Of a stretch of DNA of 46,261 nt, positions 9,670-33,804 are shown one piece after another (the stretch's first letter is position 1; each line of letters opens with the position of its first letter). Position numbers and translations under genes: made by a program. Source of the DNA: Octopus bimaculoides (Eukaryota); the NCBI RefSeq assembly GCF_001194135.2, contig NC_068995.1:25790516-25836776 (forward strand). Direction: 5' to 3'. Below the pieces are notes generated by a model. That model saw only the letters and a program-made list of their open reading frames with translations. It ran no database searches and had not been told where the DNA came from.

Positions 9670-9702
<33 letters not shown>

Positions 9703-12951: not shown

Positions 12952-12991
<40 letters not shown>

Positions 12992-13249: not shown

Positions 13250-14925
13250 GGTCGGAGATTCGCCTCTGAAAAGGGAATGAAGATTCATCGGACAAAAATT
13301 AAACGTACCACCAAAACAGTAATTCATGAGCAGTGCACTAAAAATGCAGATAAGGCCAAAGCCAGGTTGCAAACCAGAGTGCAAATGAGTTTACTATGGG
13401 AATACAGTCCCAAGAAGCACAAACAGTGTCCATGATTCAAATTCCTTCCAGCGAGCAGTGAACGGGCTTGGGATCCACTTTACAAGGAAATCTGCAAGGC
13501 TTAATACAAAACCCTGGGTACCTAGAAGTATGACAAGCACCCAGAGGCTTGGGGCGAAATAATATACAGTATTAGCAGACAGTACTTTGGTGTTAAAGAA
13601 GCGAAGAGCAAGAAACCGACCGGAAAGAATAAGCAGCAAAGGGAGATGGGATCCAGAGGATATAGAAAGAGATGCCTGAAGAAACAACTGCAGACTTCAA
13701 GTCCCGAGGAGAAAGAAGTTTTGTTGCAGATTCGCAAAGACCTGAAGAAAAACAGCACAGCGCCCTCAGCAGTGCAGACTACTTGAGGAAAAGTAGATTT
13801 ATACCGGAAAAAGAGCAGGACCGGTTCTTCAATGAGCCGCTCAAACACGCTAGGAGCCTCTTTGATCGACCACGGTCAGATGTACTAGACATTGAGAAAA
13901 AGTCTCTTGAAGCTCACCTGAGAAGACGTATTCCGACCCTAAACGACAACAACCACTTGACCATAATACAAACTTAGTGTGGCCAAGTCGTCCTGGGGTG
14001 GAATTCAACAAACCTCCAACACGTGCTGAAGTAAGGAAAGTTGTCAATAAGACAAGGAACAAATAAGTTCCTGTATAAGAAATGCCCAAATATTCTGAAA
14101 TGGTTGCATGCAAGATTCACACTGGTTTGGAAGAATTGGATGAAGGAAAATGGATTGTACATACCAAAGAAACAAGACACAAGGAATCAACCAATTCCGA
14201 TTAATTTCACTCCTGAATGTCGAATGGAAAATATTCTTCTTGATAATGGCTCTCAGACTAACCAATTATCTACTCCATAATGGCTATGTAGACACGTCTT
14301 TTGAGAAGGTTGGTGTGCCAGGGATAGTTGTATGCCTTGAACATGGGAACATGATCTGAGAATCTATTCAGAAAGCAAGAGAGAATAAGACTGGCCTTGA
14401 TGTAATTGGTTAGATCTAAAAAACGCGTATGGCTCTGTTTCACATCAGATGATTCAGCTGACACTCCAGATGTATCATGTACCGGAAGCAATGCGCGAAA
14501 TGCTTGATTCCACTTCTCGGGATTTCAGAAGCAGTTCAGCCCCAAGAGATACACAACTGCCTGGGCTAGATTGGAGATTGGAATTGGGATAGGTTGTGCA
14601 ATGTTACCAATACTCTTCGTGATGATAATGCAGGTAATTCTTAGGGCAGTAGAAAGCAAAGCAAGTGTGGCAGACCTTGGCAGTGGATGTAAGGTGCCAC
14701 CCCTGAAAACCTACATGGACGACACTACTATCCTTGCATCATCAAAGGAGTCAGAAACCTGGAATCTACTCATCCAACTGGACGAGTTGATGGTCTGGTG
14801 TGGATTGGCTTTCAAATCCAAGAAATCTAGGAACCTCTCCCTAAGGAAAGGAAAAATGAAGGAAAATATTAGCTTCAAAGTCGGTGGCCCAAAGTTTCCT
14901 ACTGTATCGAAGCAGCCAGTGAAAG
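13250..14925 (+). mobile_element. HERO-like LINE, N-terminal and RT region, degenerate
   Basis: QGINQFRLISLLNVEWKIFF, KVGVPGIVVCLEH, WLDLKNAYGSVSH, GIGIGCAMLPILFVM, PPLKTYMDDTT, FKSKKSRNLSLRKGK, PTVSKQPVK; many frameshifts. Confidence 0.82.
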
Positions 14926-15115
14926 AAAGGCATGGTCTGTCACAAACTGTGCACACAAAAAGGTCATTGTGATCCGTCTTCTTGATCGTAACATTATTCT
15001 TGAAATCTCTCTTGAGTCTTGCATGCGTTTTCCTGGCCTCTTCAAACGCTTTCACTCCACACTTTTGTTTGCCATCCAGTTCGATCCGAAACAAAGGGTT
15101 TCTATGTCGTCTGTA
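14915..15115 (-). mobile_element. RTE-type LINE C-terminal fragment
   Basis: GVKAFEEARKTHARLKR...FVCTVCDRPCLS resembles the RTE ORF C-terminus (G...FE..R...A..KR followed by a C-x2-C zinc-finger-like motif). Confidence 0.55.
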
Positions 15116-15121
15116 AATATA

Positions 15122-16235
15122 CAGGGTGCGTACGGTATTTCAGAACATTGGGTGGGGGGGTTGCTGCAATTTTTGCTAAATCTGTATAATCTTTGCTTCA
15201 GAAAATAATAATGGCAGAACCTCAGCTTACTCAAGAAATGAAGAGGCATGCTGTTATTGTGGTTATAAAAGCTGAGCATAGCCATTTAGAAATATCTCGA
15301 TTTTTAAAAGTTGCCAGATCTTTCGTAAGGTGCTACATACTGAAGATGGAAATGTATCACCAGTATCAAAGCATTTAAAGCATCTTAAACGCCCTGAAAT
15401 CATCAGAACACATGAATTTATCAAGCAAGTTCAACAGACCATTGATTACAATCCCAGAAAGTCCATGACGTCAAACGCAAAAGATCTCCACATGTCAGAA
15501 GGAACAGTCAGAAATGTTGTCCACGAAGACATATAAGTCTTATATGATGAGGAAAGGTCAATTTGTCAGAAAAGGCAAAAGAAAATCGCTACACTCTGAT
15601 CTAAAAGACTCTTAAACAAACTGAGAAATCCAGAAGAAGATTTGATTTCGTTGTTCGCAAACGAGAAAAACTTCGACAAAGATAAAAAAAGTTAACAGAA
15701 GAAATGACAGATGTTTATATACATGCACTTCCGAAGTTCTGAGTGTTATGCATACAAAATTTCCTGCAAGTGTCATGGTTTTAGGGGTTGTCAGCAATGA
15801 AGGACATGTGATGCTTCCTTACTTCTTTCAACAAGGCCTTAGAGTTATCTCTGCCGCCTACATTGAGGTCCTGGAAATAATTAAACCCTGGATAGACTGT
15901 AAGCAACGGGAGGTCATATGTGTTTCAGTAAGACTCTGCACTATCAAACATGACTCTAGTAATTCAGGAATAGATGGCTGAAAATGTTCATGATCACATA
16001 ACCCCTAACATTTGGCCTCCTAATTCCCCAGATCTCAATCCATTGGTCTATTACAGTGGAACATTGTTGAGAGAGAGGTCAATGGACACGCCCATAACAC
16101 CAAAGATACTTTGCTAGCTGCCATAGTCAGAGTAATGTCCAAAATGAACCAGGACCACTTGATTCGAGCATGTAGATGATTTAGATCTCATATAGAAGCA
16201 GTTGTTGAAGCTGAAGGTGCCTTTGTTGAATAACA
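15122..16235 (+). mobile_element. Tc1/mariner DD37D (maT) transposon, dead; transposase pseudogene 15211-16233
   Basis: TA then CAGGGTG left terminus. MAEPQLTQEMKRHAV, HTH-like region, NEKNF, SVMVLGVVSNEG, FQ*DSA and WPPNSPDLNPLVY with 37 residues between the second D and the third catalytic position. Right TIR not seen (gap 16254-16410). Confidence 0.88.
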
Positions 16236-16410
16236 TTATAGAAAAGAAAGTTTNNNNNNNNNNNNNNNNNNNNNNNNNNNNNNNNNNNNNNNNNNNNNNN
16301 NNNNNNNNNNNNNNNNNNNNNNNNNNNNNNNNNNNNNNNNNNNNNNNNNNNNNNNNNNNNNNNNNNNNNNNNNNNNNNNNNNNNNNNNNNNNNNNNNNNN
16401 NNNNNNNNNN

Positions 16411-16441
<31 letters not shown>

Positions 16442-17018
16442 GGAATAAAAACGCAATGGAGGACAATAAAAGTAGATCTAATATATAAATCCATTGAACT
16501 ACATTTCACATGTTTTTCCACACAATAAATACCACATACATACCTACATACCTACATACATACATGCATACCTATACGTATGTATATGGACGTATATATA
16601 CGCGTGTGTATGTTTAATTATGCTTCTGCCACACATCTAACTCTATTGTCACTTCATTTTGACTCAATATATATCGTAGATATCAACAATACCCTGTAAT
16701 AGATAAAAAGAAAAAAAAAACACCATCAATAAAATATCAGTTTGAGACAAAGTCTTCCCTTGAATCACATCATACAGATAACATTGATATTTAGTATGAA
16801 ACTAAGTCATTAAATATTAGTCATTTGTTCTATTATAATAGACTTTTTCTACACAACGTATTGAATACCATTTTTGTTCATGAAAACATAAATTGTTGTT
16901 GTTGTTGTTGTTGTTGTTGTTATATGATGGATGTATGTATGAGTGTGCGCACGTGTGTGTGCTCACACACACACACACAATTAAATAAACATATATATAT
17001 ATATATAATCACCTACAG

Positions 17019-17184
17019 GGTCTTCGAGATGCTGCATATGGAGAAGGTACTGGACCTATTTTCATCGATAATGTGCTTTGCTCAGGCAAGGAGAGTCACT
17101 TTTATCAATGTCCACATAATGGCTGGATGAACCATAATTGTAATCACAATGAAGATGCAGCAGTACAATGCTTCAACTCATCAG
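17019..17184 (+). CDS. SRCR domain 1, C-terminal half (exon, phase 0-1)
   Basis: Acceptor cctacAG, donor GTTAAT at 17185. Translates GLRDAAYGEGTGPIFIDNVLCSGKESHFYQCPHNGWMNHNCNHNEDAAVQCFNSS and completes the domain begun at 8749. Not called in this frame by the ORF track. Confidence 0.93.
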
Positions 17185-17439
17185 GTTAATACAGCTAATT
17201 ATTTTTTATTATGTACTTGTGTATGAATCTTTAGAATTAAAAGAATTTGGATAGTGTATTACTGAATGCATAGTTTAAGCAGTTTTAGTCGTCTATTCAG
17301 GGTGATATGTTAGTGAATAAGTTTAGTCTGGGACCTGAGTTAACATTGAGGAAGGATGGGTTAAATTTCCGAAGTGAAAAATAGTTATGTGGCAAATTGT
17401 GAAGGAACGGGAGCAAATAGTGTTACTCTGCTCTCCACC

Positions 17440-17985
17440 TCTTCTTTAATGCATATTAATCTTCCACGTATTGACTTTACCAAAGTCAGCTGTGAACTGG
17501 AAGGAGTTCTTTAAAAAGGCCTTCCTTTGCCTCCGCTTCTCTTTCTGCTTTTTCCGAAGTAATTCTGCTCTGCCGAGCAGGTTTCTTGCATGCTAAGATG
17601 GTTTAAAGCTACTTTATTTTTATCATTTGCTTTTTTTCAGCTTTGCTTCAGCTGCTTAGCTCTTTCCTGAATCCAGCCATCTGACGCTGCCTCCTACTAG
17701 TGGGCGATCTGCTCGTTGCTTTTGTTTTCCCTCACACCAAAAGTATCTTGGAATGCCTGGTATACCACTTGCACAATGGTTCATGTCTTCCTGGTTGCGT
17801 CAACCTTCAGAATGTTGTCCAGGATGATATTCAAGTCCGTGTCGAATTAGACCCATCTCTGATCTGTAGTTGGTGGTTAATTCAGCTCTGGTTTCTTCTC
17901 GAAACTCTCGAGACTTTCAAATTTATCCACTGCTCTTGTGCACTGAGGAAGCTGAACATCTGGGCACTATAGTTTACCTCCATGA
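17440..17985 (-). mobile_element. HERO-like LINE N-terminal fragment
   Basis: LDTDLNIILDNILK..VYQAFQDTFGVRE..AKQLKQS*KKA..; same region as 13400-13900 in the opposite orientation. Confidence 0.6.
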
Positions 17986-18696
17986 CAATGAAAATATGAC
18001 ATGAATATAAAGACAAATGGCAATCATGTAATGATACACACGCCAACCAATAAAAGGAGTACCACCAATGAATTGGTAAACAAAATAACGATAACCATAC
18101 CCAGTGCTTTAATATGTCATTCGGAGACCGTACTATAAAATTTATAGTAATAACACAAAATGAAGCTGCTTCAATGTATATAAGACAATCCCAAAATACT
18201 GCCTTATGGTTACAGGGATGTTAAACAATAGTTGCAGGGAAAAGGAATCGGTTTCAATAAACAACATACTCCACACCATGTATTGGTAACATGTTAATGT
18301 GCGCACGCACACACACACACACACATACACAAACACACACGTACACACACACACGTACACACACATACACACATTTTACAAAGTAATTATCTCATTACTA
18401 TTTACGAAGATTTGCTATGATATAAACCATAGCTATAGGAATACTATACTGGGCTTCATTGAAACAACTATCTAACGAATTAAATTCGGAACTATCGATG
18501 CGAAGCACTGCATTAACAGCAGCTTGAATGGCAACCGTGTTTGTAATGATTTAAAAACCATTTCTTAGATGGAAAACTGTGGTTATTATGTATTTGTATC
18601 TATACATTTTTCTAGAATTATGTCTGAAAATACGAATTCATGTAATTCTTTTAATCAGAGAGATTTCCACAAAATTCTTACTTTCCTCTATTGCAG

Positions 18697-19026
18697 TGCG
18701 CTTGGAATCTCGCAGCGGAATTAATGCTGGAATCGTTATGATGAGAATTAACGAAGAATGGTTTATGGTCTGTGATTCGATGTGGGATGATATGGATGCT
18801 CGTGTAGTTTGCACTCAACTTGGTTTTGTTGATGGCAAAAGCATGTGCTGTTCTACACTTGGTAACAGAGATTCCCATGCAGTGTCCACTGTGGAAAATA
18901 TCAACTGTACTGGTAACGAAAAAATCCTTCAGGATTGCAAACATACAAGAAGACTTTGGGGACGTTGTTACGATAATGCTGCTTCTGTAATTTGCTACAA
19001 TACATCAGCGCAGGACGTTGATAATT
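18697..19026 (+). CDS. SRCR domain 2 (single 330-nt exon, phase 1-1)
   Basis: Acceptor ctttcctctattgcAG, donor GTAAGT. VRLESRSGINAGIVMMRINEEWFMVCDSMWDDMDARVVCTQLGFVDGKSMCCSTLGNRDSHAVSTVENINCTGNEKILQDCKHTRRLWGRCYDNAASVICYNTSAQDVDN. Confidence 0.93.
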
Positions 19027-19064
19027 GTAAGTCATTAAGGATTTACAAGAATTGAAAAAAAATT

Positions 19065-19111
<47 letters not shown>

Positions 19112-19149
19112 TGAGTGTGTGCTGTTATGTGTATGTGTGTGTGTGTGTG

Positions 19150-19455
19150 TAGGCGCTGCCTGGTCAAATGCTTCAGAAATTTGCTTTGTAATCATGAGGC
19201 TCTAATTTCGATTCTGCTGCTTGGTATCTTTAGTAAAAGTCATTTTCCATAGCATCGCGTCGACCTATACCTTCTGGACGGAAAGTGTAGAGAAACCCGT
19301 CGGGTGCATTGGTTATGTAATGCAAAGGTCCAGCTTTGTCACACTGTGTCACGTTAAGGGCATACCTGTCTATGGAATAGTCAACAGCTGAAACACCTAC
19401 CCGTTAATTTAATGACAGGTATTGCAGTTGATTGACCAACTGAGCACTCATGATC
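19150..19455 (+). mobile_element. Decayed tRNA-derived SINE
   Basis: Degenerate tRNA-like head (tggtcaaatgcttcag...ttcgattc), core related to the 46005-46133 copy (gtcgacctatacc, agaaacccgtcg), 3' tail cccgttaatttaatgacagg. Confidence 0.5.
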
Positions 19456-21433
19456 GGAATTCTGTTAACTGCATTGTATTTATTTTTCTCAAAAAATTTG
19501 GATAACCGCATATCATTGGAATTTTTCCATTTCTTGCCGTTTTACATTTTTATGTGCAATAATGTTAATAGATTTTCAACGTAATACAATGCAAATGTGA
19601 ACATACTACATACGTTTTTTGCCAAATAGGACGTTCCTATGATATATTTTCCACGGCCCTGTTGTTGACATTCATAATCAGCATAACTACTTTCACTTTA
19701 TATACTGATCAAAGTTAACCCAGTATTCTACTGAGACCGTCGCTCCTTTGCGTACTTAAATGATTTGCAACGTCTTAGTAGCTATCCATACGAGCAGACT
19801 CGCGCTTATCAGGAGACTGATCAGTTCTTCTTATCAATTCATATATTTTCTCTTTATTGCTTTTAGTCTTCTTTGAATTAACATCACCACACATTTTCCT
19901 GGTTGCATACGCTCTTCGAGTTTACTTTATTGTCTTATTAGCAACTTATTGCTATGAAAGCGACGCCTCCGTGTCTCTGAATCAACTTGAGTCCTTTCTC
20001 CTTTTACTTTTTCTTGTTCTTTGATATATCCCTTCATGGACTCCTTCTCTCACTTCTAACACAATTTTGATCTTGCTCTTATTTCTAAGCCCTCTATCGA
20101 TTACCGTTATTTCCTTCTGATAACAAAGTGATTGTTAATGGAATTTAAATTTGTGTTGTATATACATTCGTTAACACCAACTTACTTCATACATATATGT
20201 ACGTGAATTACACAAATACTGAGCACCATAAAAAATTCTGCACTTACTAAGCACCAAAACCCAGAAACAGCTGTAAAGTATTAGCTGTATCCTCCTGTCT
20301 CTTATTTATGAAGTTCGAATATGCACTCTTCTAATATCTACCGATGTATCTATGAATAACTGCTATGGAGGATTATTGGGATCCTGCTCTCTTTTATCTG
20401 TGATATTAGAGCTTTCTGGATATCCGCATTTCTATTAAGAACTATGATGAACTCTCGCCTTCTTGATTTTCTTGTTTTTCTGCTTAATTATATTTTTACT
20501 CACTTCTTTACACCTATTTTATAAATGCCTTGATGTCATTAACAACAGCCTATCCCTCTATTATTTTATTATACTTTAATTAACTCGACCGATACATTGC
20601 TTGTAGCCAACTCGTATTTGCTTGATTTCCGTCCGTCTTCCTTTGACTTAGGACCTTATGTATCTAGTTCGGTCTCAGCACTAATTAGCTGTATCTATTA
20701 TACACGTTTTTGGCGTATTCTTACCCATTATATGTGTGTGATTTAATATATATTTGTGTGCGTGTGTGTATGTGTGTGTGTGTGTGTGTGTGCGTGCGTG
20801 TGTGTGTATGAGAGACAGAGAGAGTACGATTATGATTATGATTGCATAAACCGATCAATATCAAGGGATTTTATGGATATCAGACTTCAAATTTGATGAA
20901 CGCCATAATTAAACCTTTGTAACATTGAATATTTCCTTCTAGAATTATTTATGTCTTTTTCTAATTAACATCAAATATCCAGTTTTGGAGGTTTCATTTG
21001 AAACTGACGCTACTCAAAATTCCGTCCTTTCACTCTATTATCCAATGTAAGTATCAGTACGATAATAAGGAAGTTCAAATCCTAATCGGGTATTCTTTTT
21101 AACCGAACAGGTTATATGACAGACTTTAGATGTGTTAATGAATATGCAACGTTTATTTGCTCAAAGGATAAATTAAGCAGCTCCCACGAAATGCAAAATA
21201 TACTTTCACAATTTAATCTTAATATCAATAAATATGAAATACACTGAACTGCGAAAGAAACGTGAGACGTATGTGACTGTGAAATACGTTTTAATTTCAT
21301 TATGTCAGAAATGAATTTTGCTAAATCTGATAAAGTCAATTTCTTGGATTACTTTGACCACAGTCTATAGGTCGCTGTCATGTGTTCTGCTAGTGGGCTG
21401 ATACAGCACATCGAGATTGTAGGCGTGACATGT

Positions 21434-22437
21434 TCAATACCGTGTATGCGCTCCTTGGGTGTTCAAAACGGCCCTACACAGTCGGTACAGGGAGTGCATG
21501 AGGCGGTTCGCAAAAGCCATTGGCATCTGTGCCCACACCCTGAGGAAAGCTGCTTCCAGATCCACATGAGTTGTCGGACTTGTGATCACCTGGTTCAGCT
21601 GTCTCTGGATTTCATCCCACAGGTATTCAATTGGGTTCAAATCCGGGCTGAGAGCCGGCCACGGCATGGTTCTGATGCTGTACTGACGTGTGGGAGGGAG
21701 CATTGTCCTGCTTGAATATGTAGCTATGTTGACGCGCGAAGAAGGGTACGATATGAGGCCTTAGGATCTGGTCGATTTAGTGCTACGCTGTGATGCCATT
21801 CCCTCTGCTTGCACCAACATTTTGTAACACATAGGGCCCAATTCTCTGATTCAGGCCAATAGCACCCCATGATGCTTTGGCCACTCCATGGGTGGCTCTC
21901 CATGCTGCATGCGTCTCTGTAGGGTTCAACCCTCCTACACCATACCCTCATTCTGCCATCCGAGTTAGAAATGCAGATTTGGCTCTCGTTAGAAAAGACT
22001 ATCAACTTCTATTGTTAATGCCGCCAATGTCGGTGCTGTGTTGTTCACTGCATTCGCGCCTGACGGTGGCGGGCGGAGAGGACAAACCCTCGCGCAGGAC
22101 GACGGCAACGCAGGTTGTTGGCGGGTAGTCGACGTCATACCGTGTCGTCGCTGATGGGTCGCTGTCCAGTGCCAATGGTCTCGTGAGCTGTCACGCTGGT
22201 CAGTCTGAAGCGATCACGGAGATGTTGCAGGTGGATGAAGCGGTCCTGCCTGAGCGTGGTCACCCGAGGGTGCCCTCTGCGGGCACGGTCTGCAGTGCTG
22301 TTGTTGTTGTACGGCTGTTGCAGGCGATCGATGGTGCTGACATGGACATTGTAAGCATTCACAACAACCAGGGCATGCTGTCCTACTTGCAATCGGTCGA
22401 TAGCTTGTTCTCTCTGCGCTGCTGACAATCGGGTCAT
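21434..22437 (-). pseudogene. Tc1 (DD34E-type) transposase pseudogene
   Basis: MTRLSAAQREQAI.., GHPRVTTLRQDRFI, VFSNES (D to N), KQDNAPSH, WPALSPDLNPIEYLW, GAHTRY*; frameshifts and a deletion between the second D and the E. Confidence 0.92.
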
Positions 22438-22675
22438 ACCTGATGCGTCCAAATTACGAATTTATTTTGCATAAACTATACAAAGTTAAACAGAGAAGAG
22501 ACAGCACAAGGACAAACAGGGGTCGGGAACAAAACTCGAATGATATGGCATGATGTACAGAAAGATTACAAATTTATGACGATAGTATATCATACAGCGA
22601 ATGAAAATAAGGAGCGAGCGACCCCACGAACCACATCCATTCACTGAACCGATTGGTAACCCTTTGTGCTCTCGT

Positions 22676-25373
22676 TTAATTAGGTCCTTTCACTCCCAAC
22701 ATTCGCGCAACTTTCTTCCATCTCTTTTCATACTTACTTCGTGGCAGACTTACTTTCCTTCTAAGGTAGAAGAAAAAGAAGCTTACTAAAGCAAGGCCGG
22801 AGATGAAGGTGTATGTCATGATACCGTTCACACGTGTCTTCCACACTACCTCTTTTGCTGTAGCCACTACAGCTAGGAAACAAGCCTGCCCTTCTCTGTT
22901 TAGGGAAGGCGGTGGAACAATCTTAACTATCGACACGGTTAGCAGTTGTACTCTTCCTAGTTGTAACAGCAATTGTTCGACATCAAACCCACAGTTCCAA
23001 GAGCCCTGGCCCGAATGTTCTCCGGTACAAACTGGCATGTTGACTATCACCCAAGCCCAGAGTTGTCCCCTAGTCCGTTGTCACACTTCGTCTCTACCAA
23101 CCCTCTATAGAGTGCTGAGGTGGAACCTCCGCTGCCGGCATTACTCTCCGGGAGAGAAGTACGAGTGTCTGACTTGGTCTATACTTGATCCCCGGTTCCA
23201 GTTCACCGAAAGAAGTGAACCTGGAAAGTANNNNNNNNNNNNNNNNNNNNNNNNNNNNNNNNNNNNNNNNNNNNNNNNNNNNNNNNNNNNNNNNNNNNNN
23301 NNNNNNNNNNNNNNNNNNNNNNNNNNNNNNNNNNNNNNNNNNNNNNNNNNNNNNNNNNNNNNNNNNNNNNNNNNNNNNNNNNNNNNNNNNNNNNNNNNNN
23401 NNNNNNNNNNNNNNNNNNNNNNNNNNNNNNNNNNNNNNNNNNNNNNNNNNNNNNNNNNNNNNNNNNNNNNNNNNNNNNNNNNNNNNNNNNNNNNNNNNNN
23501 NNNNNNNNNNNNNNNNNNNNNNNNNNNNNNNNNNNNNNNNNNNNNNNNNNNNNNNNNNNNNNNNNNNNNNNNNNNNNNNNNNNNNNNNNNNNNNNNNNNN
23601 NNNNNNNNNNNNNNNNNNNNNNNNNNNNNNNNNNNNNNNNNNNNNNNNNNNNNNNNNNNNNNNNNNNNNNNNNNNNNNNNNNNNNNNNNNNNNNNNNNNN
23701 NNNNNNNNNNNNNNNNNNNNNNNNNNNNNNNNNNNNNNNNNNNNNNNNNNNNNNNNNNNNNNNNNNNNNNNNNNNNNNNNNNNNNNNNNNNNNNNNNNNN
23801 NNNNNNNNNNNNNNNNNNNNNNNNNNNNNNNNNNNNNNNNNNNNNNNNNNNNNCAAGACATACAGCAGAGGCAAGAGTGGACATCCTTGACGGACCGAGC
23901 GCCTGATGCAGAACGGCTCCGAGAAGAAACCGTTCACCCGAACGACCGACTTGATGTTGCTATATAAAGCGTTGATCCATCCGCGAAAGGTTGGGCTAAA
24001 TCTGCCCGTTGCGAGGACCGCCGCCGGATACTGATGGTCTACCCTATCAAAGGCTTTATATTGGTCTAAATGGACCAAGCCTTACCCTAGCCAGTAATTC
24101 TATTAACCCTCTCTAAGATGGAGATTGTCGTGTATAGACCTACCGGGGTTGGCGCAGGTTTGCGCCTCTCCGACAAGTCTACCCACGACTCGTGCCAATC
24201 TTTTTGCTAGTACTTTGGCCAAAATCTTCAACTCTGCGTTAAGCAGAGTGATGGACCTAAAATTATCAATTACATCCCCCCTTGTTTGAGTCCTTTCTAA
24301 GTAGCACCACTACCCCATGGCTCACAGACTTAAGAATACTCCCGTACTGCTGCCAGTTGGTGTAGACGCATGCTAGTAGGTACCCAAACAAGTCTAGCAT
24401 ACTATAATAAAGTTCATAAGGGAGACTATCTCGTCCCGGCGACCTGTCCCCACCACAGTCGACAAGGCCTCTTTCACTTCCTCGGCTGTGATTGGCCCTT
24501 CATAGCATTCCACATCCCACCCCGAGAGGCCCGGAAAACCGACGAGGAGGTCCTCTCTACGTCTCCTCCCTCCCCGAACAGCTGAGCGAAATGGTCGCGA
24601 AAGACCTTACACATTTCATCGTGCACTCATGCTGGTCCGTCAAGGACCTTAATGTGGCATTATTGACACACTGCGTCTCTAACACATGAGCCCATTCAGC
24701 AACGTTAATTTCCTCTCTGACAATGCAAAACTTGTATTTAACTTCGAAGTGATGGTTGAGTGCCATTCTCGCTGCCAGACTTCAATGTCGTTTCTAGATC
24801 ATTCTAAGTATGATCTAGAAGACCCATTGCTATTTTACTACGTCCACTGTGGAACATCCAGGTAATCTAGTTTATATCGATCTGCCAGCTGAAAACGACT
24901 AAGCAGATCGTTGAGGAAAGAGTTTCCCCTACGCGTGCATCGCAAATTGCGTTGAAGTCACCTAATAACACTAATGTGTGTGACGTACCAAGAATATTCT
25001 CTAGGCTTCTGAAAAGGTCAGACTGTCTAGTCCTGCAAGGGGCACAGACAGCTACCAAACTGAAAGTCTTACCACTTCTGTGCGTCACTTCAAGGACGAC
25101 CAGCCTGCCCTTCGTGTCAACAAAGTTTATTCTTGAGTAGAATTGCGACTCCTCTCCTCTCACCACTACCACCTCTAGGTTGACATGGAGAAATAACTTT
25201 CTCGTAGTTGTTTAGGTGAGGTGAAAAAAAATAAGCCGGCAATCCACTCAGTCTGGTCTTAGTAGTGACTATTACATCTAAAGGATGCGACCTGAGATCG
25301 ATAAGGAAACGTCTTTGTTTCCAATCCGACCCCAGGCCGCGAAATTTATACATCCTAAGTTAAACGAAAGCAT
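22676..25373 (-). pseudogene. L1/Tx1 ORF2 (APE endonuclease plus reverse transcriptase), disrupted
   Basis: MLSFNLGCIN/RGL, GVAILL, GRLVVLEV, AVCAP, LGDFNAI, SRSYLE; DNFRSITLLNAELKILAKVLAKRL, LDQYKAFDRVDH, VRQGCPLLPLLYVL; C-terminal AKEVVWKTR. Gap 23231-23853 and internal deletions. Confidence 0.9.
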
Positions 25374-25379
25374 AAAATG

Positions 25380-26600
25380 TCACATTGCCTTCAATTGTAG
25401 TTAATGGTGTATCCTTTATTAGCTCCTGGTAAAGTGAGTATAATATATCTCTCAACCAAGGGCCAACGTCTTTCGGATATGATTTTTTTTAATTGACTAT
25501 GATTATCTTTCTCAATGATAAAGAATTTTATGCGGATGGGAGTATCAGAATTAAACGGATGATTATATGCTTTAACATTTTTAGTTTTGTTATTTCTGTT
25601 TTTTAAAAGGTCTATTTTAGTGTTTATTGCCGTTATAGCTATGGGGAGAATTTGTGTGTCAACTTTGGGGAGTGAAGAGGGTTAGTTTGTGTGTCAGCGT
25701 TGGAGAGTGGGGAGGGGAGAGTTTGTGTCTTGTGTATGTGTTTCTGTGAGGGCAGTGTCTGGGCTTTTTTCTTTTTTCTAAGCGAAACAGTAGTCCGCTT
25801 ATTTTTGTCTTCGTCTTTTTCTTCATCTGTGTTCTTTCTTTTGGTCAACGAGGTCTCTCCCTCCTTCTTCGGCACCACTTTAGCCAGCAGTGGAGGTGCG
25901 ACTTGTTTTTCTCTTGGTGGGGGAACAGATGTTTCCACGGTTGATGGAGGGCATTTCACTCTTATGTGGCCCTTCAGGCCACACTTGTAGCACCGAGGCT
26001 TCCTGCCCTCCACCGCAACTCTCAACTTGGTGTTTTCCTTCACGTAATTATGTCTGTAATATCTTCAAGTTCCTCTGAGGCAGCCTGGATTAATATTTTC
26101 AGTGTCTGCCCCATCCAGTTGTGTTTTAGGAATTTTGTAGCTTTGAGGATTATGATTTTTCTCCTCCAAGCCCAGAAGGATGACATCTCTGATCCAGGCA
26201 ACATCTACGTCAGGTGGTATTTCTCCTACCCTAACCCTAGAAGTGCGTCTTCTAAGATATATGGGTAGGAGAACCACCTCAACTCTTTTTAGTGTATTTG
26301 TGGAATGCTGCTTGGCTATCTCTTCTTACCGAAACTGCACTTCTACTGTCCCGTTCCTTTTCGCCCTGGCAAGATAAAACACATCCTGCCAGAGTGGGCG
26401 AAGGCATTGTTTCATAGCGTACTTCGAAACCAAGTCGATTATTTTATTCATGATGACAAAAGTCTTGTAAATAATTGTATTATTTCTCAGGGAGGGGTTA
26501 TTTTAGCTTCGTGTCCCTCCCTTTTGAGTAAACCTTTGTGTCTTCCTGCTACAAATTGAATTTTCTCCTTCGCCACACTGGTGGCCGCCGCGAAATTTAT
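25380..26600 (-). pseudogene. L1/Tx1 ORF1 (gag-like, CCHC) of element B
   Basis: LLPIYLRRRTSRVRVGEIPPDVDVAW; LRVAVEGRKPRCYKCGLKGHIRVKC (C-x2-C-x4-H-x4-C). Confidence 0.82.
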
Positions 26601-26884
26601 TGTCTTTTTCTCATTCCTTTCCAAGCTTTTTTTCATTATTCTCATAGTTACTCTCCGTAGTCTGGGTCGTGTCCTGGTTCTTCTCCCGGTCCGTAATCAA
26701 AGTTTCCAACATTTTACCATCGAAAGCATGTTTTGCAGGGGAGAAGCGCAAAACAGTCTGCAAAAAGTAGAAAATAAGGTTTCTAAACAACAACAAAAAT
26801 CCAGCTGTAACAAACCAGCAGTAACAGCAGCAAAAAATTCAACAAGCACAGCAATCAACAGCGAGAGGCGTCCAAATTTCGAAT

Positions 26885-28633
26885 TTATTCTTTACTAACC
26901 ACACAGGGTCGAAGTACAGAGGGGACAATACAAGGAGAGACAAAAAAACGAAGTGGGGAAAAAACGAATGAAAAACAATGAAATGTGAAAAATATGAAAG
27001 GTGAAATCACAGCCACTCGAGCCTCACATCCAAAGTGGCCTCACTGAACTCTTTTTAAAAAAAAAAAGTTTATAGCTTGAGTCACTTTATCTCTTTTTTA
27101 AAACACTTTTTTTTTAAAGAAAACAGTCAACCTCAAGTTTGTTCAATACAGTGTGGTCAATAACCAGAGTTAGCAAATCAATCACTACTTCTACACACAA
27201 CGATCCAACGTCCGACTCACACGTCTCTCTCAACACACAGTGCCTTTCCCCATTGACGAGTACACATCTTATATGTGAGGAAAAATCCCCGACATGCGCG
27301 TTCACCCTTATTACTGACTTCATTTTTAATCGTTTTTCTATCTCTTTTGCCTTTATATCGTGCATAAATACGAAAGCCATTTTGGGGGTACGGAGCTGAG
27401 AAGTTTGATTCTTCTGTATGTACGTTTGTATATTTGTAGGTGCAGGGTTGGGATTAGTGACTAGTGGGGCAGGACGTAGATTGCCGTAGGGTGAGGGAAG
27501 AGTGTGGGTAAGTTGGGGGCTAGTATCAGAGGAGTGAGTCTTCCTTTTTTCCTCTTTCTCTTGGAAACCGTCCACTATTCGTTCTCTTTTGATTCATCAC
27601 TTCATCTTCTTTTCCTCCGCATTTGTCGTTGCAGGCGGCAGATACGCGATTTCCTTCACCACTGGTGGGATCACTGGTGCTTTTGCGGGAGGTAGAGGGC
27701 ATTCTGCTCTTAGGTGACCCTTCTGGCCGCACTTGAAGCAACGAGGTCTCCTGCTCTCCACCACAACCCTCAACCGTTTTTCACCCACCAAAATGGTGTC
27801 TGCGGGGCAGCTTGGACATTCATTTCCAGTCTCTGCCCCAGCCAGTTTTGAGTTGGCATTCTTGTTGCTTGGAGGATTAATATTCTTTCTTCCAAGCCTA
27901 ATGTTATGGCTGCCACCAGCCAGGCAACGTCCAACTCAAGTGGGATTTCATCCACCCTTTCCTTGGAAGCACGCCTTCCAAGATAAGTTGATAGTAATAT
28001 TATCTCGTCTGTCTTCAGGGCGGCTATGGAGTGTTGCCTGACCCTTTCCTCTGTGTGAAAACGTACCTCAACTATCGCATACTTGTTGCGCCGGACCAGA
28101 TACTTGATTTCCGACCAGATAGGTCCCAAACACTTCATCCCTCTTTGCCAGTCGATTTTATTAAATATGACCTGTCGTCACCATTTTTGCCAGCATATCT
28201 TGTGACACTTCACTGGGAGTGGTCAGTTCAACTACATACCCCACCTTCTTCATCATGTTTTTATACCTTTTCACGTCTTGCATCTTCGACGTTATATCCT
28301 CCTTCACAGCACCTGTCGCGACCGCAAAACCTTTAACACTTTTTTCGTTTTTCTTCTCTCCATTTCTCTTGACATCTCCTCCATATTAATCAGAGGCTCC
28401 ACCATTCCACTTTCTGACGAATCAGAAAGACTCAACCTTTCACAATCGAAATTATTTTCGCTAACAAGCGTTTCTTCCCTCAATCAAAGGAAAACGATAG
28501 TAAGACCGCCGCAAAGCAGCAAAACAATGGTGCACCAACAACACACAACAAAAACAATGCTCAACAATTCAACAACTGTAATACAACAAGCAAACAAGCG
28601 ATAACGACCGCAAACAAGGATTACCAACTCTTA
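26885..28633 (-). mobile_element. ORF1-only L1/Tx1 derivative (element A, HAL1-like)
   Basis: ORF1 homologous to that of element B (LLSTYLGRRASKERVDEIPLELDVAW; LRVVVESRRPRCFKCGQKGHLRAEC), followed directly by a 3'UTR sharing GTTCAGTGA and TGGATGTG with B and ending in AATAAA. No EN/RT motifs found. Confidence 0.75.
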
Positions 28634-28670
28634 GCGGACGGATTTTGAATGCCAGGAACACGAAGTTGAT

Positions 28671-28677
28671 TTTTATA
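28671..28677 (-). promoter_or_regulatory. Putative TATA box of the Tc1 transposase
   Basis: TATAAAA on the minus strand inside the Tc1 5' segment, 27 nt upstream of a CATTC initiator-like site and about 50 nt from the ATG once the inserts are removed. Confidence 0.4.
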
Positions 28678-29117
28678 CCCATAACCTCCACGAGATTCAC
28701 GTTCATTTCGGTTTTCATGACAACTGTTTGCCACCCACGGCATTCAACACAGTTGTGTTTTGGCATCTCGTTTCAGGAAAAGTTGAAAGGTTACCTGCAA
28801 TTTGGGTCCCAGCCATAAACTAGCATGTCTTGGAATATTTACACTTACATCCCCGAAATAAATTTTCAGAATTTACAATATAAAAATGACATTTGAAAAA
28901 ATGCCGTTTCTTTTGCGGTTCAGTGTAGATACTTCATAAGATCAATATCATGTTCTTGCTCACAGGTAGCACAATGTTCAGTTCATATTTTAAACTGAAA
29001 AAAGAATTATTTGAAAATGTTTAAAATGTAAGTACTGAACCAGCTTTAAATATTGTATTTTGAAAAGGAAAAATCTTTATCTCCCAGCATATTGTTGATA
29101 TATACTACCCACTTGTG

Positions 29118-29375
29118 AGATCAGGACATCTCCAAAGTAGTGCTACGGGCTGTAGCACTACTTTGGAGATGTCCTGATCTTTCGAAGAAAGAATTTAATT
29201 TCATTAATGTTATAAAGGAATGCTGTGTGGGTAAATGATGTCACCCACCAACACCGAAGGACATCTCCAAAGTAGTGCTACAGCCCGGTTTCTTTCGAAG
29301 AAAGAATTTAATTTCATTAATGTTATAAAGGAATGCTGTGTGGGTGAATGATGTCACCCACCAACACCGAAGGAC
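29118..29375. repeat. Perfect 29-bp inverted repeat plus 84-bp direct duplication
   Basis: Arms 29118-29146 and 29152-29180 with loop GGGCT; 84-bp copies at 29179-29262 and 29292-29375 with one mismatch. Confidence 0.97.
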
Positions 29376-29918: not shown

Positions 29919-31044
29919 ATACCTTGATTACATGAAGTTTACATTGTCGCTAGGAGTTCCCGTGTTAACTTGCAGGGGATTTGATCAGCATTTCGTTCCG
30001 GACGTGAACATGCTTTCGCTGTTGTTTTAGGAAAACTACTCTCTTTTGACGATATTGATAGAGTGAATTCCAAGACACTAATATTTTGGCATGACAGCGC
30101 TTCCTTAATCAAAATCACCGTCCGAATCTCTAAAGCTGTTGGACTTTTTATTCCTCAAATCTGGAGTACCCCAATCACAGCAACAAAGTAATGTTAGTTC
30201 AAACTAACTGCAATTCTGTAAATGTACGAATGCATCGCCATATGGAAATTTGTTCGGCCAATACTCACAAGAAATGCATAGCAATATCATACACCAAAAA
30301 GGACTCAATTTAATGGTTGAAGTACACTTAAAGCATTTAGAAAAGCCAACGATCAGTCACAGTACATAAAGACAAAATTATTTATTATAAGATACAAAAG
30401 AAGTACAAGCAAGTATGCAAACTCTACATCATCTGATGGTAAAACCTTCCAGAAAATCTGATATCCCGTCCATCCAACTGTAACGGAAGGATATCAGACA
30501 TTTCATTTTGATAATTCCAATACACTATTATGGCTAGTTAACTTACTTTATTTAAAATGTATTTAATAAACAATGAAGATTAAGTTTTTAGTACTACACT
30601 ATCATGCTTCTTCATATTTTTGTTACTTAATCTAAGTTTTGAGTTATCCATTTATATTCCTTTTGCCACCTTTCTTTACTTTCCTGTTACTACTTCTATA
30701 TAGCAAATCAATGCTGGCACGGTCAATTTTATTGATAATTTCGTAATTTTTCAGTACAGTAAACCAGACAATGTAATGCAGTGACACTAACTGCAGATCA
30801 ACACTATATTTATTTTAACCCGTCATTAAGCTAATTGCTTTAATTCTTCATTAAAATCTAATTAGTCGTCGACGTGCAAAACTGGACTACGTTTTTCAGT
30901 TTGGATCCTCACTGTTCTAATTTCAATTTATAAAGTCAAAACAGAGTTAAATTAATAGACTTTCTTTTTCGTCCCGATAAATTATTTTTCTGTCTATTAA
31001 AAATTCAATTCAACAATAATTTTTTTTCTGATTGTTACTTCTAG

Positions 31045-31353
31045 CATTTGCATTCCGATTGAGAGGTGGTGACTACAATTGGGGCCGCGTTGAAGTCCGT
31101 CATTTAGGTATTTGGGGCCAAGTATGTCGGGAGTATAACAACGAGAAGGAAGCACAAGTTGCATGCAGGTCAGCAGGTTTTCAGGGAGGAGTTCAATATG
31201 GATCTGTAAAAGAAGGTCACATTCCTTACTGGTTAACATCATTAACTTGTCGTGGCAACGAAACCAGTTTAGACGAATGTGTTATAGACAGATGGGGACA
31301 GCCGGCTGCACTTGCTAGCTGTACTCCTACCTACGTCTTGTGCTACCAGCATA
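31045..31353 (+). CDS. SRCR domain 3 (single 309-nt exon, phase 1-1)
   Basis: Acceptor ttacttctAG, donor GTAAGT. FAFRLRGGDYNWGRVEVRHLGIWGQVCREYNNEKEAQVACRSAGFQGGVQYGSVKEGHIPYWLTSLTCRGNETSLDECVIDRWGQPAALASCTPTYVLCYQH. Confidence 0.93.
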
Positions 31354-32035
31354 GTAAGTTAATGTTACGTTTTATTTTCGTTATCGTTTTATTTTCGTTA
31401 TCTTTTAAATTCTATATCCCGTGGGTATTGTTTTACTTTATGTTGTTTTCATATTGCATTCTCTGTCTGCAACAACAAACATTTTTTTTTCTCTTGAAAA
31501 CCATAAGGTGAAATGAAGCACCGAGGCGAACACTGTTGACATTGCACTATTTTGAGTGTTTTCAACATTGTTCTGCCTATCCTTCAATCGCAACTTATGC
31601 AAATGTTACTACAATTTCCCAAATCAAATTTTGTTTCAATTATTCGATACGTGATAGATTGTCCCACTTCATAACGCAGACCTAGCTAAAGGTATTTTGT
31701 AGAAGACCAGTGGTTTTCTGTGCATGCAATTCTACTATTGATATGGAGTAAATTCTACTATTGATATTGATAGTAATTGCAACTATAGCTTGGCATCAGT
31801 GTCGTTGCAGGCTAGCATCAGAACGCAAAAAGCTAGAGAAGATGGTGAAGGTCATCCTGTCGGGCATTGTAACAATTTTTCCAGTCATCCACCCTGCAGT
31901 AGAACTTTATCTCCACTAAAATTATAAATGTCAAACTTGACCTCGACGAACTCAGAGCGCAGTGCAGGAACAAATTCTATTCGATGCTTTAACATCATAC
32001 CCACAAACCCCCAATATTTCAATGTGTGTGTATGT

Positions 32036-32096
<61 letters not shown>

Positions 32097-32411
32097 NNNN
32101 NNNNNNNNNNNNNNNNNNNNNNNNNNNNNNNNNNNNNNNNNNNNNNNNNNNNNNNNNNNNNNNNNNNNNNNNNNNNNNNNNNNNNNNNNNNNNNNNNTGC
32201 AGAAATTGAAAAGCTATCCGAAAACACAAAATAAAGCAACAGACACAGGATATAACATTTAAACAATAACGAAAACAAAACGAAAAACGTCTTGAGAATT
32301 TTATTGATTAAATCGTTATTTTCTTTTGACTTTTGTTTTCTTGTTTTGCCTCCTTCCAAACCTCTGTTATTCCTATTCATCGCCTGTCGTATATGTCATC
32401 TCTACTTACAG

Positions 32412-32729
32412 ATTTAACACTACACTTAGTGGGAGGAGATAAAAATGACGGTGCTGTAGAAATAATTTACGATGGACAACGCGGATCTTTGTGCGTGGAA
32501 GACTGGGATTACGGTGACGTTGATATTATATGTAAACAACTTGGTTATATAGGTGGAAGTTTCCAGCGATCGTTAAAGAAACGTTACAAGTCTACCATAT
32601 TTATGTCAGATATGCGTTGTCTTGGTTTCGAGACATCAATATTTCAGTGTACCAATACTGGATGGAATATTACAAAAGAAGTTGGTTGTGGAAACAACCA
32701 CGATGCCACTGTACACTGTTACAATAAAG
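32412..32729 (+). CDS. SRCR domain 4 (single 318-nt exon, phase 1-1)
   Basis: Acceptor tctctacttacAG, donor GTACGT. LTLHLVGGDKNDGAVEIIYDGQRGSLCVEDWDYGDVDIICKQLGYIGGSFQRSLKKRYKSTIFMSDMRCLGFETSIFQCTNTGWNITKEVGCGNNHDATVHCYNK. Confidence 0.93.
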
Positions 32730-33804
32730 GTACGTGTTTTTGTTTTCTTTCTCTTTCAGTAAAATTCTTTTGACAAAATATTTTGAATGACAGTTGATGA
32801 TATTTTTTTCACATTCCACAATAATTACCCTTAGAAAAGTAGTAAGAAAACCTTTATACACGGTGAACAATTGAGATATTCTGTAATCCTAGCGGGGGTA
32901 AATTGGCTTTCATAAGGAAATTATATTTGTGAGAAATTATCGAAAGTCTTGAAATAATTTTTCAAGAATAGGAATACGTATCACAACATAATACTAACAA
33001 AAATAACACCATCTAACGATTGTAATCGGATTAAGAATGCTTAGATATAATGGAAATAGATTTCTGAAGTGTGAAATTTCCAGCACTCATATAGTTTACG
33101 TGCAGGATATACTCGTTTGATATACATCGAGTGAAAAATTTGAAAGAAATTTGTGCATTTAAAAAAACTTTCTACTGATACAGAACCTGAAATTTTGTAG
33201 GTTTCTCTCATTAGTGTTTGCAGTGGACCTAAAACGAGTTAAATACGTTTACAAACATGGTTTGACGAAAACTTCCCAGTTTACCGAAAAAATACACTAT
33301 AGTGGCCACTACATATAATCTATTACAAGCCAACGAGTAAGTACTTACGTGGTTGCTTGTTCTGCTGGAAGTAGCAAACACATCTCCTTTCAATCACACC
33401 ATATTGTCTTAAAAAAAGCAGAGCACATTCTATAACGTGGCCTGGGGTTCACTAGATAGAGAAAGATAGTATCGACGCAGCTGTGTAATCTTTAATCATA
33501 AATCTACTCAATCAGTGTTACTTGGGACTAAGCAACATCTACAGTCAAATTTATATGAAAAACGCACATTACTGTGTGTGTGTGTGTGTGTGTGTGCGTG
33601 TGTGTGTTTGTGTGTGTGTGTGATATTAAATATGAAAACATAAAATCTAGCTGCTGAAAACGTTAATCTAACGTCAGTTATTTTGCTGCGCTTTTATTAA
33701 TCTTTTTCATATATATTAACATATTTGTTGAATATCCTGGAATCTTTCAATTAATGCCAACAACTTATAGTTGTAACTACAATCTCTCTTTCAGTCTTTT
33801 TATG

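What the first reader, a model, noticed from the sequence alone, without database searches (positions are those of the whole stretch)
21242..28925. Two L1/Tx1 retroelements stacked head-to-tail inside a Tc1 transposon, joined by the same 17-22 bp motif: possible transposon-targeting retrotransposon family
Seen: an intact-TIR Tc1 element is split just upstream of the transposase ATG (22437) by elements A (28633-26885) and B (26867-22462), both co-oriented with the transposase. The B/Tc1 junction (22445-22466, GCGTCCAAATTACGAATTTATT) and the A/B junction (26868-26889, GCGTCCAAATTTCGAATTTATT) match at 21/22, although the A and B ORF1 proteins are clearly diverged. A degenerate third copy (28634-28650, 12/17) lies at the Tc1/A junction. 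No poly(A) tail is visible. Established: Tx1-clade elements include sequence-specific families (Xenopus Tx1L inserts into the Tx1D DNA transposon), and specific elements build tandem arrays by re-inserting into the regenerated target. Inference: this family may target a conserved site in a Tc1 transposon. Alternative: the motif is the elements' own conserved 3' terminus (AATAAA plus 16 nt) and the stacking is chance.
Basis: partly seen in the sequence, partly recalled or inferred. Interest (0 to 1): 0.8.

Follow-up and report, generated by a model that had tools for sequence, protein, structure and literature searches.

The report
LINE retrotransposons stacked in a Tc1 transposon
Two different, decayed L1/Tx1-type LINE retrotransposons sit head-to-tail at exactly the same 17-bp site in the 5' leader of a Tc1 DNA transposon, which looks like a mollusc example of the already known habit of Tx1-type LINEs of inserting into other transposons.

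Summary
A decayed Tc1 element (21242-28925, minus strand) has intact inverted ends and TA flanks. It is split 7 nt before its transposase ATG by LINE A (ORF1 only) and LINE B (ORF1 plus endonuclease/RT ORF2). Each LINE is followed by ATTCG[A/T]AATTTGGACGC.

Three uninterrupted copies of the same Tc1 family from other datasets read CCTGGC-ATTCGTAATTTGGACGC-ATCAGGTATG. The 17-mer is therefore Tc1 sequence, not the LINE terminus. The LINE tails are homologous to cephalopod LINE and SINE tails and end at ...AATAA, just before the 17-mer.

The best reading is two insertions by related but diverged LINEs (ORF1 37% identical) at one Tc1 site, with a 17-bp target-site duplication sandwiched between them.

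The assembly gap lies inside B's RT. Its flanks are collinear with a homologous octopus ORF2.

Limits: only this one locus was available, no other A or B copies were found, and more distant relatives are dispersed.

Tx1-clade LINEs that target DNA transposons are already known (Tx1L into Tx1D; Tx1-Mar into Mariner). This is at most a new member of a known kind.

The parts
21242..28925 (-). Whole composite: a decayed Tc1-family DNA transposon carrying two nested LINEs. TA target duplications lie at 21240-21241 and 28926-28927.
   Evidence: Inverted repeat I2. TA flanks read directly. 86-89% nucleotide identity to the empty Tc1 copy L001 on both sides of the insert.
28905..28925 (-). Tc1 5' terminal inverted repeat.
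28647..28904 (-). Tc1 5' leader. It aligns to the empty copies up to ...CCTGGCATTC.
   Evidence: BLASTN to L001 ends at L001 position 451. Alignment A2.
28634..28650 (-). Degenerate 17-mer ATTCAAAATCCGTCCGC at the Tc1/A junction. ATTC (28647-28650) is Tc1. The origin of the other 13 nt is unresolved: a diverged target copy, or the 5' end of A.
   Evidence: 7-8/13 matches, empirical frequency 0.005-0.023.
26885..28633 (-). LINE A, an ORF1-only element. 5' UTR, then ORF1 remnants about 27597-28405 with CCHC (CFKCGQKGHLRAEC), then about 700 nt without ORF2 homology, then a conserved 3' tail (26885-26975) ending ...GTAAAGAATAA. No poly(A).
26868..26884 (-). Middle copy of the Tc1 17-mer (ATTCGAAATTTGGACGC), sandwiched between the 3' end of A and the 5' end of B. 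Read as a target-site duplication.
   Evidence: 16/17 identical to the native Tc1 sequence in L001/L014/L015.
22462..26867 (-). LINE B, a decayed full-length-type element. 5' UTR 26713-26867. ORF1 remnants about 25639-26712 with CCHC. ORF2 remnants 22676-25353 (APE endonuclease and RT). 3' tail ending ...CAAAATAA. Carries many frameshifts and internal deletions.
   Evidence: Deletions relative to O. sinensis ORF2a aa 203-329 and ORF2b aa 523-582, the latter including the zinc finger.
23231..23853 (.). Assembly gap inside the RT domain of LINE B.
   Evidence: Flanks are collinear with O. sinensis ORF2.
22445..22461 (-). Native-position copy of the Tc1 17-mer (ATTCGTAATTTGGACGC). It is continuous with ATCAGGT and the transposase ATG.
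21434..22437 (-). Decayed Tc1 transposase ORF (HTH_Tnp_Tc3_2 and DDE_3) with stops, frameshifts and a 26-nt deletion.
21242..21262 (-). Tc1 3' terminal inverted repeat.

Best explanation
A Tc1-family transposon was hit twice, at the same nucleotide, by two related but well-diverged L1-group (most likely Tx1-clade) LINEs.

Shown:
- The site is a 17-bp stretch of the Tc1 5' leader, CCTGGC^ATTCGTAATTTGGACGC^ATCAGGT-ATG, ending 7 nt before the transposase start codon.
- Both LINEs lie in the sense orientation.
- Each LINE ends in its own conserved non-poly(A) tail (...AATAA) joined directly to ATTCG...
- A second copy of the 17-mer lies between the 3' end of A and the 5' end of B.

Inferred mechanism, by analogy with target-primed reverse transcription in L1, Tx1L and R1:
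1. The LINE endonuclease nicks the antisense strand of Tc1 at ...CGAAT^GCCAGG.
2. Reverse transcription starts on the 3' tail of the LINE RNA.
3. The sense strand is cut 17 bp downstream, after GGACGC.
4. Repair duplicates the 17-mer on both sides of the insert.
5. Because the duplication regenerates the site, a second element can enter one of the two copies. That gives the observed order: LINE, 17-mer, LINE, 17-mer.

Other inferences:
- The order of the two events cannot be decided.
- The irregular 5' junction of A (ATTC plus 13 odd nucleotides) may be a 4-bp duplication with added bases. Alternatively it is a diverged target copy carried on the 5' end of A's RNA from its donor site.
- Insertion in the sense orientation downstream of the Tc1 promoter region would allow co-transcription with Tc1.
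- The intact inverted ends would leave the composite mobilisable by transposase supplied in trans.

All partners are now dead: transposase, both ORF1s and ORF2 are broken.
For: - The 17-mer is native Tc1 sequence. Three independent empty copies (L001 from NCBI GCA_029935955.1, L014 from a JGI metagenome, L015 from a Logan run) read ...CCTGGCATTCGTAATTTGGACGCATCAGGTATG. L002 and Haliotis L018 carry 13/17 variants at the same place.
- The window's left Tc1 part aligns to L001 up to position 451. The right part aligns from position 448.
- The 17-mer occurs exactly twice in the window, at the two LINE 3' junctions.
- A and B are different elements: ORF1 proteins are 37% identical, and the best DNA block is 68%. 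They share about 100 nt of homologous 3' tail.
- That tail is also found in O. sinensis and Argonauta LINEs and in cephalopod SINEs, where it ends at the same aligned column and is followed by unrelated DNA.
- B has APE endonuclease and RT domains. An intact O. sinensis relative has APE, RT and zf-RVT, and aligns to human L1 ORF2p over residues 3-868 with E=2e-60, against 7e-24 for R2.
- Related LINEs in O. sinensis form a head-to-tail array of at least 5 elements, with short repeated sequences at the junctions.
- Published precedent: Tx1L inserts into Tx1D. Crocodilian Tx1-Mar and SINEU-3 insert into Mariner-N4_AMi with a 16-bp duplication and 'tandem insertions sandwiching a TSD' (PMC4494074).
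Against: - There is only one locus. No further copy of A or B was found in any searchable collection.
- All five other copies of this Tc1 family, from other genomes, are empty at the site.
- The expected third perfect 17-mer upstream of A is absent; only 11-12/17 match.
- SINEs sharing the LINE tail are dispersed in cephalopod DNA.
- The P0038 LINE family (about 44% identical to B's ORF2) is in a mariner in only 1 of 3 copies. Target specificity is therefore not a property of the whole group.
- A 16-17 bp duplication is also normal for non-specific L1-type insertions.
- Tx1-clade membership was not tested phylogenetically.
Confidence: 0.62

Rival explanations
1. The LINEs are ordinary, weakly specific L1-type elements. 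The first one hit the Tc1 leader by chance. The second re-used the same nick site only because the duplication preserved a locally favoured site, or because this LINE group tends to stack next to resident copies. On this view there is no Tc1-targeting family.
For: - SINEs with the same tail are dispersed.
- The P0038 relatives are not transposon-specific.
- O. sinensis relatives stack head-to-tail at a place with no detectable Tc1.
- A 17-bp duplication is typical of non-specific L1 insertion.
- 0 of 5 other Tc1 copies are filled.
Against: - Re-use of one exact phosphodiester bond by a second, 37%-diverged element is extremely unlikely for an enzyme with many alternative sites in a large genome.
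- A's 3' end abuts target DNA, not a resident LINE tail. Homology-driven 'homing' onto a resident copy therefore does not fit.
- Stacking with a duplication sandwiched in between is what the literature describes for target-specific Tx1-dependent elements (PMC4494074).
Confidence: 0.22
2. The pair arrived, or was assembled, as a unit. Either a read-through transcript 'A, 17-mer, B' from an older donor Tc1 was retrotransposed in one event, or unequal recombination between two Tc1 copies, each filled by a different LINE, joined them. Targeting of the Tc1 site is still implied, but by earlier events elsewhere.
For: - Only one well-formed duplication pair is seen, around B.
- The junction upstream of A is irregular.
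- The LINE tails lack a strong terminator, and an AATAAA is completed only at the junction.
Against: - No donor locus is known.
- The model needs the same site-specific insertions it tries to replace, so it is less parsimonious.
- It cannot be separated from the main model with a single locus.
Confidence: 0.1
3. The motif is the LINEs' own conserved 3' terminus (AATAAA plus 16 nt), and the stacking inside Tc1 is coincidence.
For: On the window alone, the motif follows both LINE bodies.
Against: - The 17-mer is present, uninterrupted, in three empty Tc1 copies with Tc1 sequence on both sides.
- Homologous LINE and SINE tails end before it.
- It is absent from the related LINE loci checked, L003, L004 and L005, at up to 3 mismatches.
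Confidence: 0.01
4. The arrangement is an assembly artefact: a draft scaffold joined repeats wrongly.
For: The scaffold has 11 N runs, one of them inside B.
Against: - All three junctions lie in uninterrupted sequence. The nearest gap is at least 770 nt away.
- The shared repeat at the junctions is only 22 nt, too short to mislead an assembler.
- The gap flanks are collinear with a homologous ORF2.
Confidence: 0.03

Closest known systems
Tx1L inserted into Tx1D in Xenopus laevis (composite Tx1c elements)
   Same: An APE-type LINE of the L1 group sits at one specific sequence inside a DNA transposon, giving a composite with intact transposon ends. The target is duplicated. The endonuclease is the presumed determinant of the site (PMC1950540, PMC4494074, PMC6719617).
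   Different: Here the host transposon is an autonomous-type Tc1, whereas Tx1D is a non-autonomous piggyBac. The site is the 5' leader just before the transposase ATG. The duplication is 17 bp. The host is a mollusc, not a frog. Specificity here rests on two insertions at one locus, whereas Tx1L has many copies and an endonuclease assay.
Tx1-Mar LINEs and SINEU-3 targeting Mariner-N4_AMi in crocodilians; also Tx1-9_AMi targeting Harbinger (Kojima 2015, PMC4494074)
   Same: Tx1-type LINEs prefer a defined site in a Tc1/mariner-superfamily transposon. The duplication is 16 bp (17 bp here). Tandem insertions 'sandwiching a TSD' are described. Co-transcription from the host transposon is discussed.
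   Different: Different host phylum and a different transposon family (Tc1 rather than mariner). The crocodilian case rests on genome-wide statistics (more than 20% of flanks), which could not be done here.
R1 and R2 rDNA-specific LINEs
   Same: Site-specific insertion, dependence on transcription of the target, and tandem or repeated occupation of a multicopy target. This comparison is a working analogy only (PMC1919474, listed; discussion in PMC4494074).
   Different: R2 uses a restriction-like endonuclease and R1 belongs to a different clade. Their target is a host gene, not another transposon.
Cephalopod L1-Tx1 LINEs and tRNA-derived SINEs
   Same: The closest protein relatives of A and B are cephalopod. 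ORF1 is 43% identical to Octopus sinensis and O. bimaculoides proteins, and the RT is 62% identical to Argonauta hians. The 3' tail ...GCCCCTTGTGGnTAATAAAGAAAT is shared with LINEs and SINEs there. L1-Tx1 is an annotated, active LINE type in Octopus vulgaris (PMC13282606).
   Different: Those relatives are dispersed or arrayed at non-Tc1 sites. No Tc1 targeting has been reported for them in the papers found.

Membership tests
Tc1 family (Tc1/mariner superfamily DNA transposon) | Terminal inverted repeats flanked by a TA target duplication | tested here: met
   23-nt inverted repeats, 91% complementary. TA lies on both sides.
Tc1 family (Tc1/mariner superfamily DNA transposon) | Transposase with an HTH DNA-binding region and a DDE catalytic domain | tested here: met
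   The window copy hits DDE_3 at 29.9 bits (above the cut-off) and HTH_Tnp_Tc3_2 at 28.8 bits (just below the 31.5 cut-off, as the copy is decayed). Intact relatives P0001 and P0002 (373 aa) carry both domains. The DNA is 86-89% identical to L001.
L1-group LINE (L1/Tx1) | ORF2 with an N-terminal APE-type endonuclease followed by an L1-like RT | tested here: met
   B hits Exo_endo_phos (8e-07) and RVT_1 (1e-12). The O. sinensis homologue aligns to human L1 ORF2p over residues 3-868 at E=2e-60, against 7e-24 for R2. Caveat: the PDB holds no CR1, RTE or I-clade ORF2, so this comparison does not by itself exclude those clades.
L1-group LINE (L1/Tx1) | C-terminal zinc-binding motif (zf-RVT type) after the RT | tested here: inconclusive
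   Present in relatives: O. sinensis E3 hits PF13966 at 2e-08, and P0037, P0050, P0084 and P0087 are annotated with it. In B itself that segment is deleted and Pfam finds nothing (protein 5).
Tx1 clade | ORF1 protein with an RRM plus a CCHC knuckle ('type I' ORF1p; this definition is from my own knowledge) | tested here: inconclusive
   CCHC is present in A (27.2 bits) and B (16.8 bits, below the cut-off). No RRM is detected by Pfam. The AlphaFold model of homologue P0099 was too poor to use (pLDDT 48).
Tx1 clade | RT phylogeny placing the element among Tx1 references (Tx1L, Keno, Kibi, Koshi, Mutsu) rather than L1 proper | not testable with these tools
   No reference Tx1 sequences (Repbase) were available. 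Indirect support only: surveys list L1-Tx1 as the L1-group LINE type found across molluscs (PMC10294476, PMC13282606).
Target-specific LINE (criterion of PMC4494074: one kind of sequence in more than 20% of flanks) | Most or many copies of the family are flanked by the same target sequence | not testable with these tools
   Only two insertions at one locus are available, and both are at the identical Tc1 site. The source genome is not searchable here.
Target-specific LINE | The junction motif belongs to the target, that is, it is present in unoccupied target copies | tested here: met
   Three empty Tc1 copies carry the exact 17-mer in an uninterrupted leader.

The most novel reading that the evidence does not exclude
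A mollusc (cephalopod-related) Tx1-type LINE lineage, including an ORF1-only derivative, is a dedicated parasite of one Tc1 family. It would insert only at the 17-bp site just upstream of the transposase ATG and be transcribed from the Tc1 promoter. It would shut off the transposase of the copy it occupies. It would then ride inside the still-mobilisable composite, possibly even during horizontal transfer of the Tc1, which is found from gastropods to this genome.
Probability: 0.15. Interest if true: 0.6.

Novelty: new member of a known kind. Interest (0 to 1): 0.4.

Why it matters
If a genome-wide census confirms it, this would extend transposon-targeting by Tx1-type LINEs from vertebrates (frog, crocodilians) to molluscs and to an autonomous Tc1 as host.

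The target is precisely defined: 17 bp, 7 nt before the transposase ATG. That placement both silences the host copy and puts the LINE under its promoter. Such a compact target would be convenient for studying how APE endonucleases acquire sequence specificity.

As it stands, this is a well-documented single fossil locus of a known phenomenon. It does not represent a new mechanism.

Tried and rejected
- Other copies inside the window: none for Tc1, A, B or the LINE tail.
- Exact look-up of ten window ORFs in the protein collection: none present, so the source genome could not be reached.
- Pattern scans of public collections:
  - The 23-nt site pattern in metagenome contigs gave 0 hits.
  - The inverted-repeat pattern in metagenome and prokaryotic genome contigs gave only chance hits and one distant Tc1, 67% identical, with no motif.
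- Protein searches found relatives only at 43-62% identity, with no close A or B copies.
- P0038 LINE family: one copy sits next to a mariner transposase (L004), which looked like a second transposon-targeting case. It is split-mariner in 1 of 3 copies only, so this is treated as chance.
- Haliotis Tc1 copy (L018): empty at the site. It is interrupted elsewhere by an unrelated 1.26-kb insert.
- Structure prediction of the ORF1 homologue, to test for an RRM: pLDDT 48, unusable, so no fold search was run.
- Apparent similarity between A's 153-aa downstream ORF and the C-terminus of the O. bimaculoides ORF1-like protein: not significant (E = 0.2-9.7).
- Consensus fold of the 3' tails: only a 4-bp hairpin at -3 kcal/mol, which is not evidence of structure.
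- Papers on Tx1L by PMC id (PMC85248, PMC362770): not held.
Full report
**Observation.**
- On the minus strand a Tc1-family transposon runs from 28925 to 21242. It has 23-nt inverted ends and TA on each side.
- Its transposase ORF starts at 22437 and is broken by stops, frameshifts and a 26-nt deletion. It still hits DDE_3 and HTH_Tnp_Tc3_2.
- Two LINEs lie between the Tc1 leader and the ATG, in the same orientation.
- A (28633/28646 to 26885) has only an ORF1 with a CCHC knuckle.
- B (26867 to 22462) has an ORF1 with CCHC and an ORF2 with an APE endonuclease and an RT.
- Each LINE is followed by ATTCG[A/T]AATTTGGACGC, at 26884-26868 and 22461-22445. These are the only two matches in the window, against 0.29 expected.
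- There is no poly(A).
- A and B ORF1 proteins are 37% identical.

**The gap.** The N run at 23231-23853 lies inside B's RT.
- An intact homologous ORF2 from Octopus sinensis aligns with residues 60-206 to 24300-23875 and with residues 475-504 to 23142-23053. Strand and order are the same.
- The two sides therefore belong to one element. About 268 residues (RT motifs and thumb) are missing.
- That needs about 804 nt against 732 nt spanned, so the N length is probably a slight underestimate.
- The frame cannot be determined and does not matter in a copy full of frameshifts.
- No junction is near the gap.

**The decisive test.** A protein search with the conceptual transposase found intact 373-aa relatives.
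- The contigs of these relatives hold complete, uninterrupted Tc1 copies 86-89% identical to the window's copy.
- Three independent copies come from an NCBI assembly (L001), a JGI metagenome (L014) and a Logan run (L015). All read ...CCTGGC ATTCGTAATTTGGACGC ATCAGGT ATG.
- Two more distant copies, L002 and a Haliotis cracherodii copy (L018), carry 13/17 variants at the same position.
- The window's left Tc1 arm aligns to L001 up to position 451 (GGCATTC). The right arm aligns from position 448 (ATTCG...).
- The 17-mer is therefore Tc1 sequence.

**Second line of evidence.** The last ~100 nt of A and B are homologous to each other.
- They are also homologous to the tails of LINEs in O. sinensis and Argonauta hians, and to SINE tails there (...GCCCCTTGTGGnTAATAAAGAAAT).
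- In all of these the tail ends at the aligned column that precedes the 17-mer in the window, and it continues into unrelated DNA.
- The LINE 3' ends are therefore ...AATAA.

**Model.**
- The simplest account is target-primed reverse transcription at one site, used twice.
- The antisense strand is nicked at ...CGAAT^GCCAGG and the sense strand is cut 17 bp downstream.
- Repair then duplicates the 17-mer, and a second LINE enters one of the two copies. This gives A, 17-mer, B, 17-mer.
- The two copies flanking B are 16/17 identical.
- The junction upstream of A is irregular. After the Tc1 bases ATTC come AAAATCCGTCCGC, which match the target at 7-8 of 13 positions (empirical frequency 0.005-0.023). 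They share the A at position 6 with the middle copy.
- This could be a 4-bp duplication with extra bases, or a diverged target copy carried on A's 5' end. One O. sinensis array member (E4) likewise carries a diverged copy of its junction sequence within its 5' region.
- I leave this open. The order of the two insertions is also undetermined.

**Relatives.**
- The closest ORF1 relatives are from Octopus sinensis and O. bimaculoides (43%). The closest RT is from Argonauta hians (62%).
- The O. sinensis locus (L005) is a head-to-tail array of at least five related LINEs with a period of about 5.3 kb. The first is ORF1-only, like A. Short sequences repeat at the junctions: GGATGTGATATAATGA twice and ACTGAATACTCGTCAT three times. 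No Tc1 is present there.
- An intact ORF2 from that array has APE, RT and zf-RVT domains. It aligns to human L1 ORF2p almost end to end at E=2e-60.
- Counter-indications to group-wide specificity:
  - SINEs with the same tail are dispersed.
  - The more distant P0038 LINE family lies inside a mariner in only one of three copies.

**Comparison with what is known.**
- LINEs of the Tx1 clade that insert into other transposons are established. Tx1L targets Tx1D in Xenopus.
- In crocodilians, Tx1-Mar and its SINE partner target Mariner-N4_AMi with a 16-bp duplication and tandem insertions sandwiching the duplication. Another Tx1 family there targets Harbinger (PMC4494074).
- L1-Tx1 elements are common in molluscs and active in Octopus vulgaris. 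I found no report of Tc1 targeting there.
- Membership in the L1 group is supported. Tx1-clade placement could not be tested for lack of reference sequences.

**Verdict.**
- Two diverged LINEs used the same Tc1 site. This is best explained by sequence-specific insertion (confidence about 0.6).
- The main rival is a chance first hit followed by local re-use (about 0.2).
- Family-wide targeting is unproven because only this locus could be examined.
- The kind of system is already known, so this is a new member of it, of moderate interest.

Noticed in passing
window 18579-19055, 31032-31511, 32333-32773, 33895-34332 (+ strand): ORFs with scavenger-receptor cysteine-rich (SRCR)-like sequence, for example RVEVRHLGIWGQVCREYNNEKEAQVACRSAGF. 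By eye these look like exons of a multi-SRCR host gene, and the composite Tc1 would then lie in an intron in antisense orientation. No domain search was run on them.
   Followed up: no
window 29118-29180 and 29123-29313: A perfect 29-nt palindrome (AGATCAGGACATCTCCAAAGTAGTGCTAC / reverse complement, 5-nt loop) lies just outside the Tc1 end. Nearby are direct repeats of the same sequence plus a repeated about 110-nt unit. This may be a MITE-like or foldback repeat.
   Followed up: no
window 14571-14972 (+): An ORF with an RT-like motif (…YMDDTTILASS…), probably a fragment of an unrelated retroelement.
   Followed up: no
L005 (Octopus sinensis CM016867.1, 70968137-70988986, reversed) 2479-20850: A head-to-tail array of at least 5 related LINEs with a period of about 5.27-5.3 kb. 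E3 and E4 are up to 98% identical over the best 300-nt block, while E2 is 73-80% identical to them. E1 is ORF1-only and is bracketed by GGATGTGATATAATGA on both sides. The later junctions share ACTGAATACTCGTCAT. Whether these short repeats are targets or LINE 5' termini is unresolved.
   Followed up: partly
L005 420-652; L003 several sites (e.g. 12220-12309): tRNA-like SINEs in Octopus and Argonauta carry the same 3' tail as this LINE group, which suggests a LINE-SINE partnership. Window LINE A's tail is closest to the O. sinensis SINE tail.
   Followed up: partly
L004 5392-6479 and 11630-11878; L016 13347-14261: In ENA assembly ERZ21867824 a 5.1-kb LINE (P0038 family) splits a mariner element. 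An empty copy of that mariner lies in L016 with about 5 bp of overlap at the site. Two other copies of the LINE are not in a mariner.
   Followed up: yes
L018 (Haliotis cracherodii JAJLRC010000001.1) 9757-12561: The same Tc1 family (79-80% identical) is present in an abalone. It is interrupted by an unidentified 1.26-kb insert at L001-equivalent position 1139/1140. L001 and L014 are 99.7% identical, which suggests recent activity in their source.
   Followed up: no
window 26885-28633 and L005 2495-4185: Both loci contain an ORF1-only element with the family's 5' and 3' ends, directly upstream of a full-length-type element. From my own knowledge this recalls 'half-LINE' (HAL1-like) non-autonomous derivatives. 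No significant similarity was found between their post-CCHC regions.
   Followed up: partly
tool coverage: L014 versus the metagenome-contig scan: L014, a JGI metagenome contig, contains the exact 23-nt pattern, yet the metagenome-contig scan returned no hit. That collection therefore does not hold every JGI contig, and the negative scans are weak evidence.
   Followed up: no
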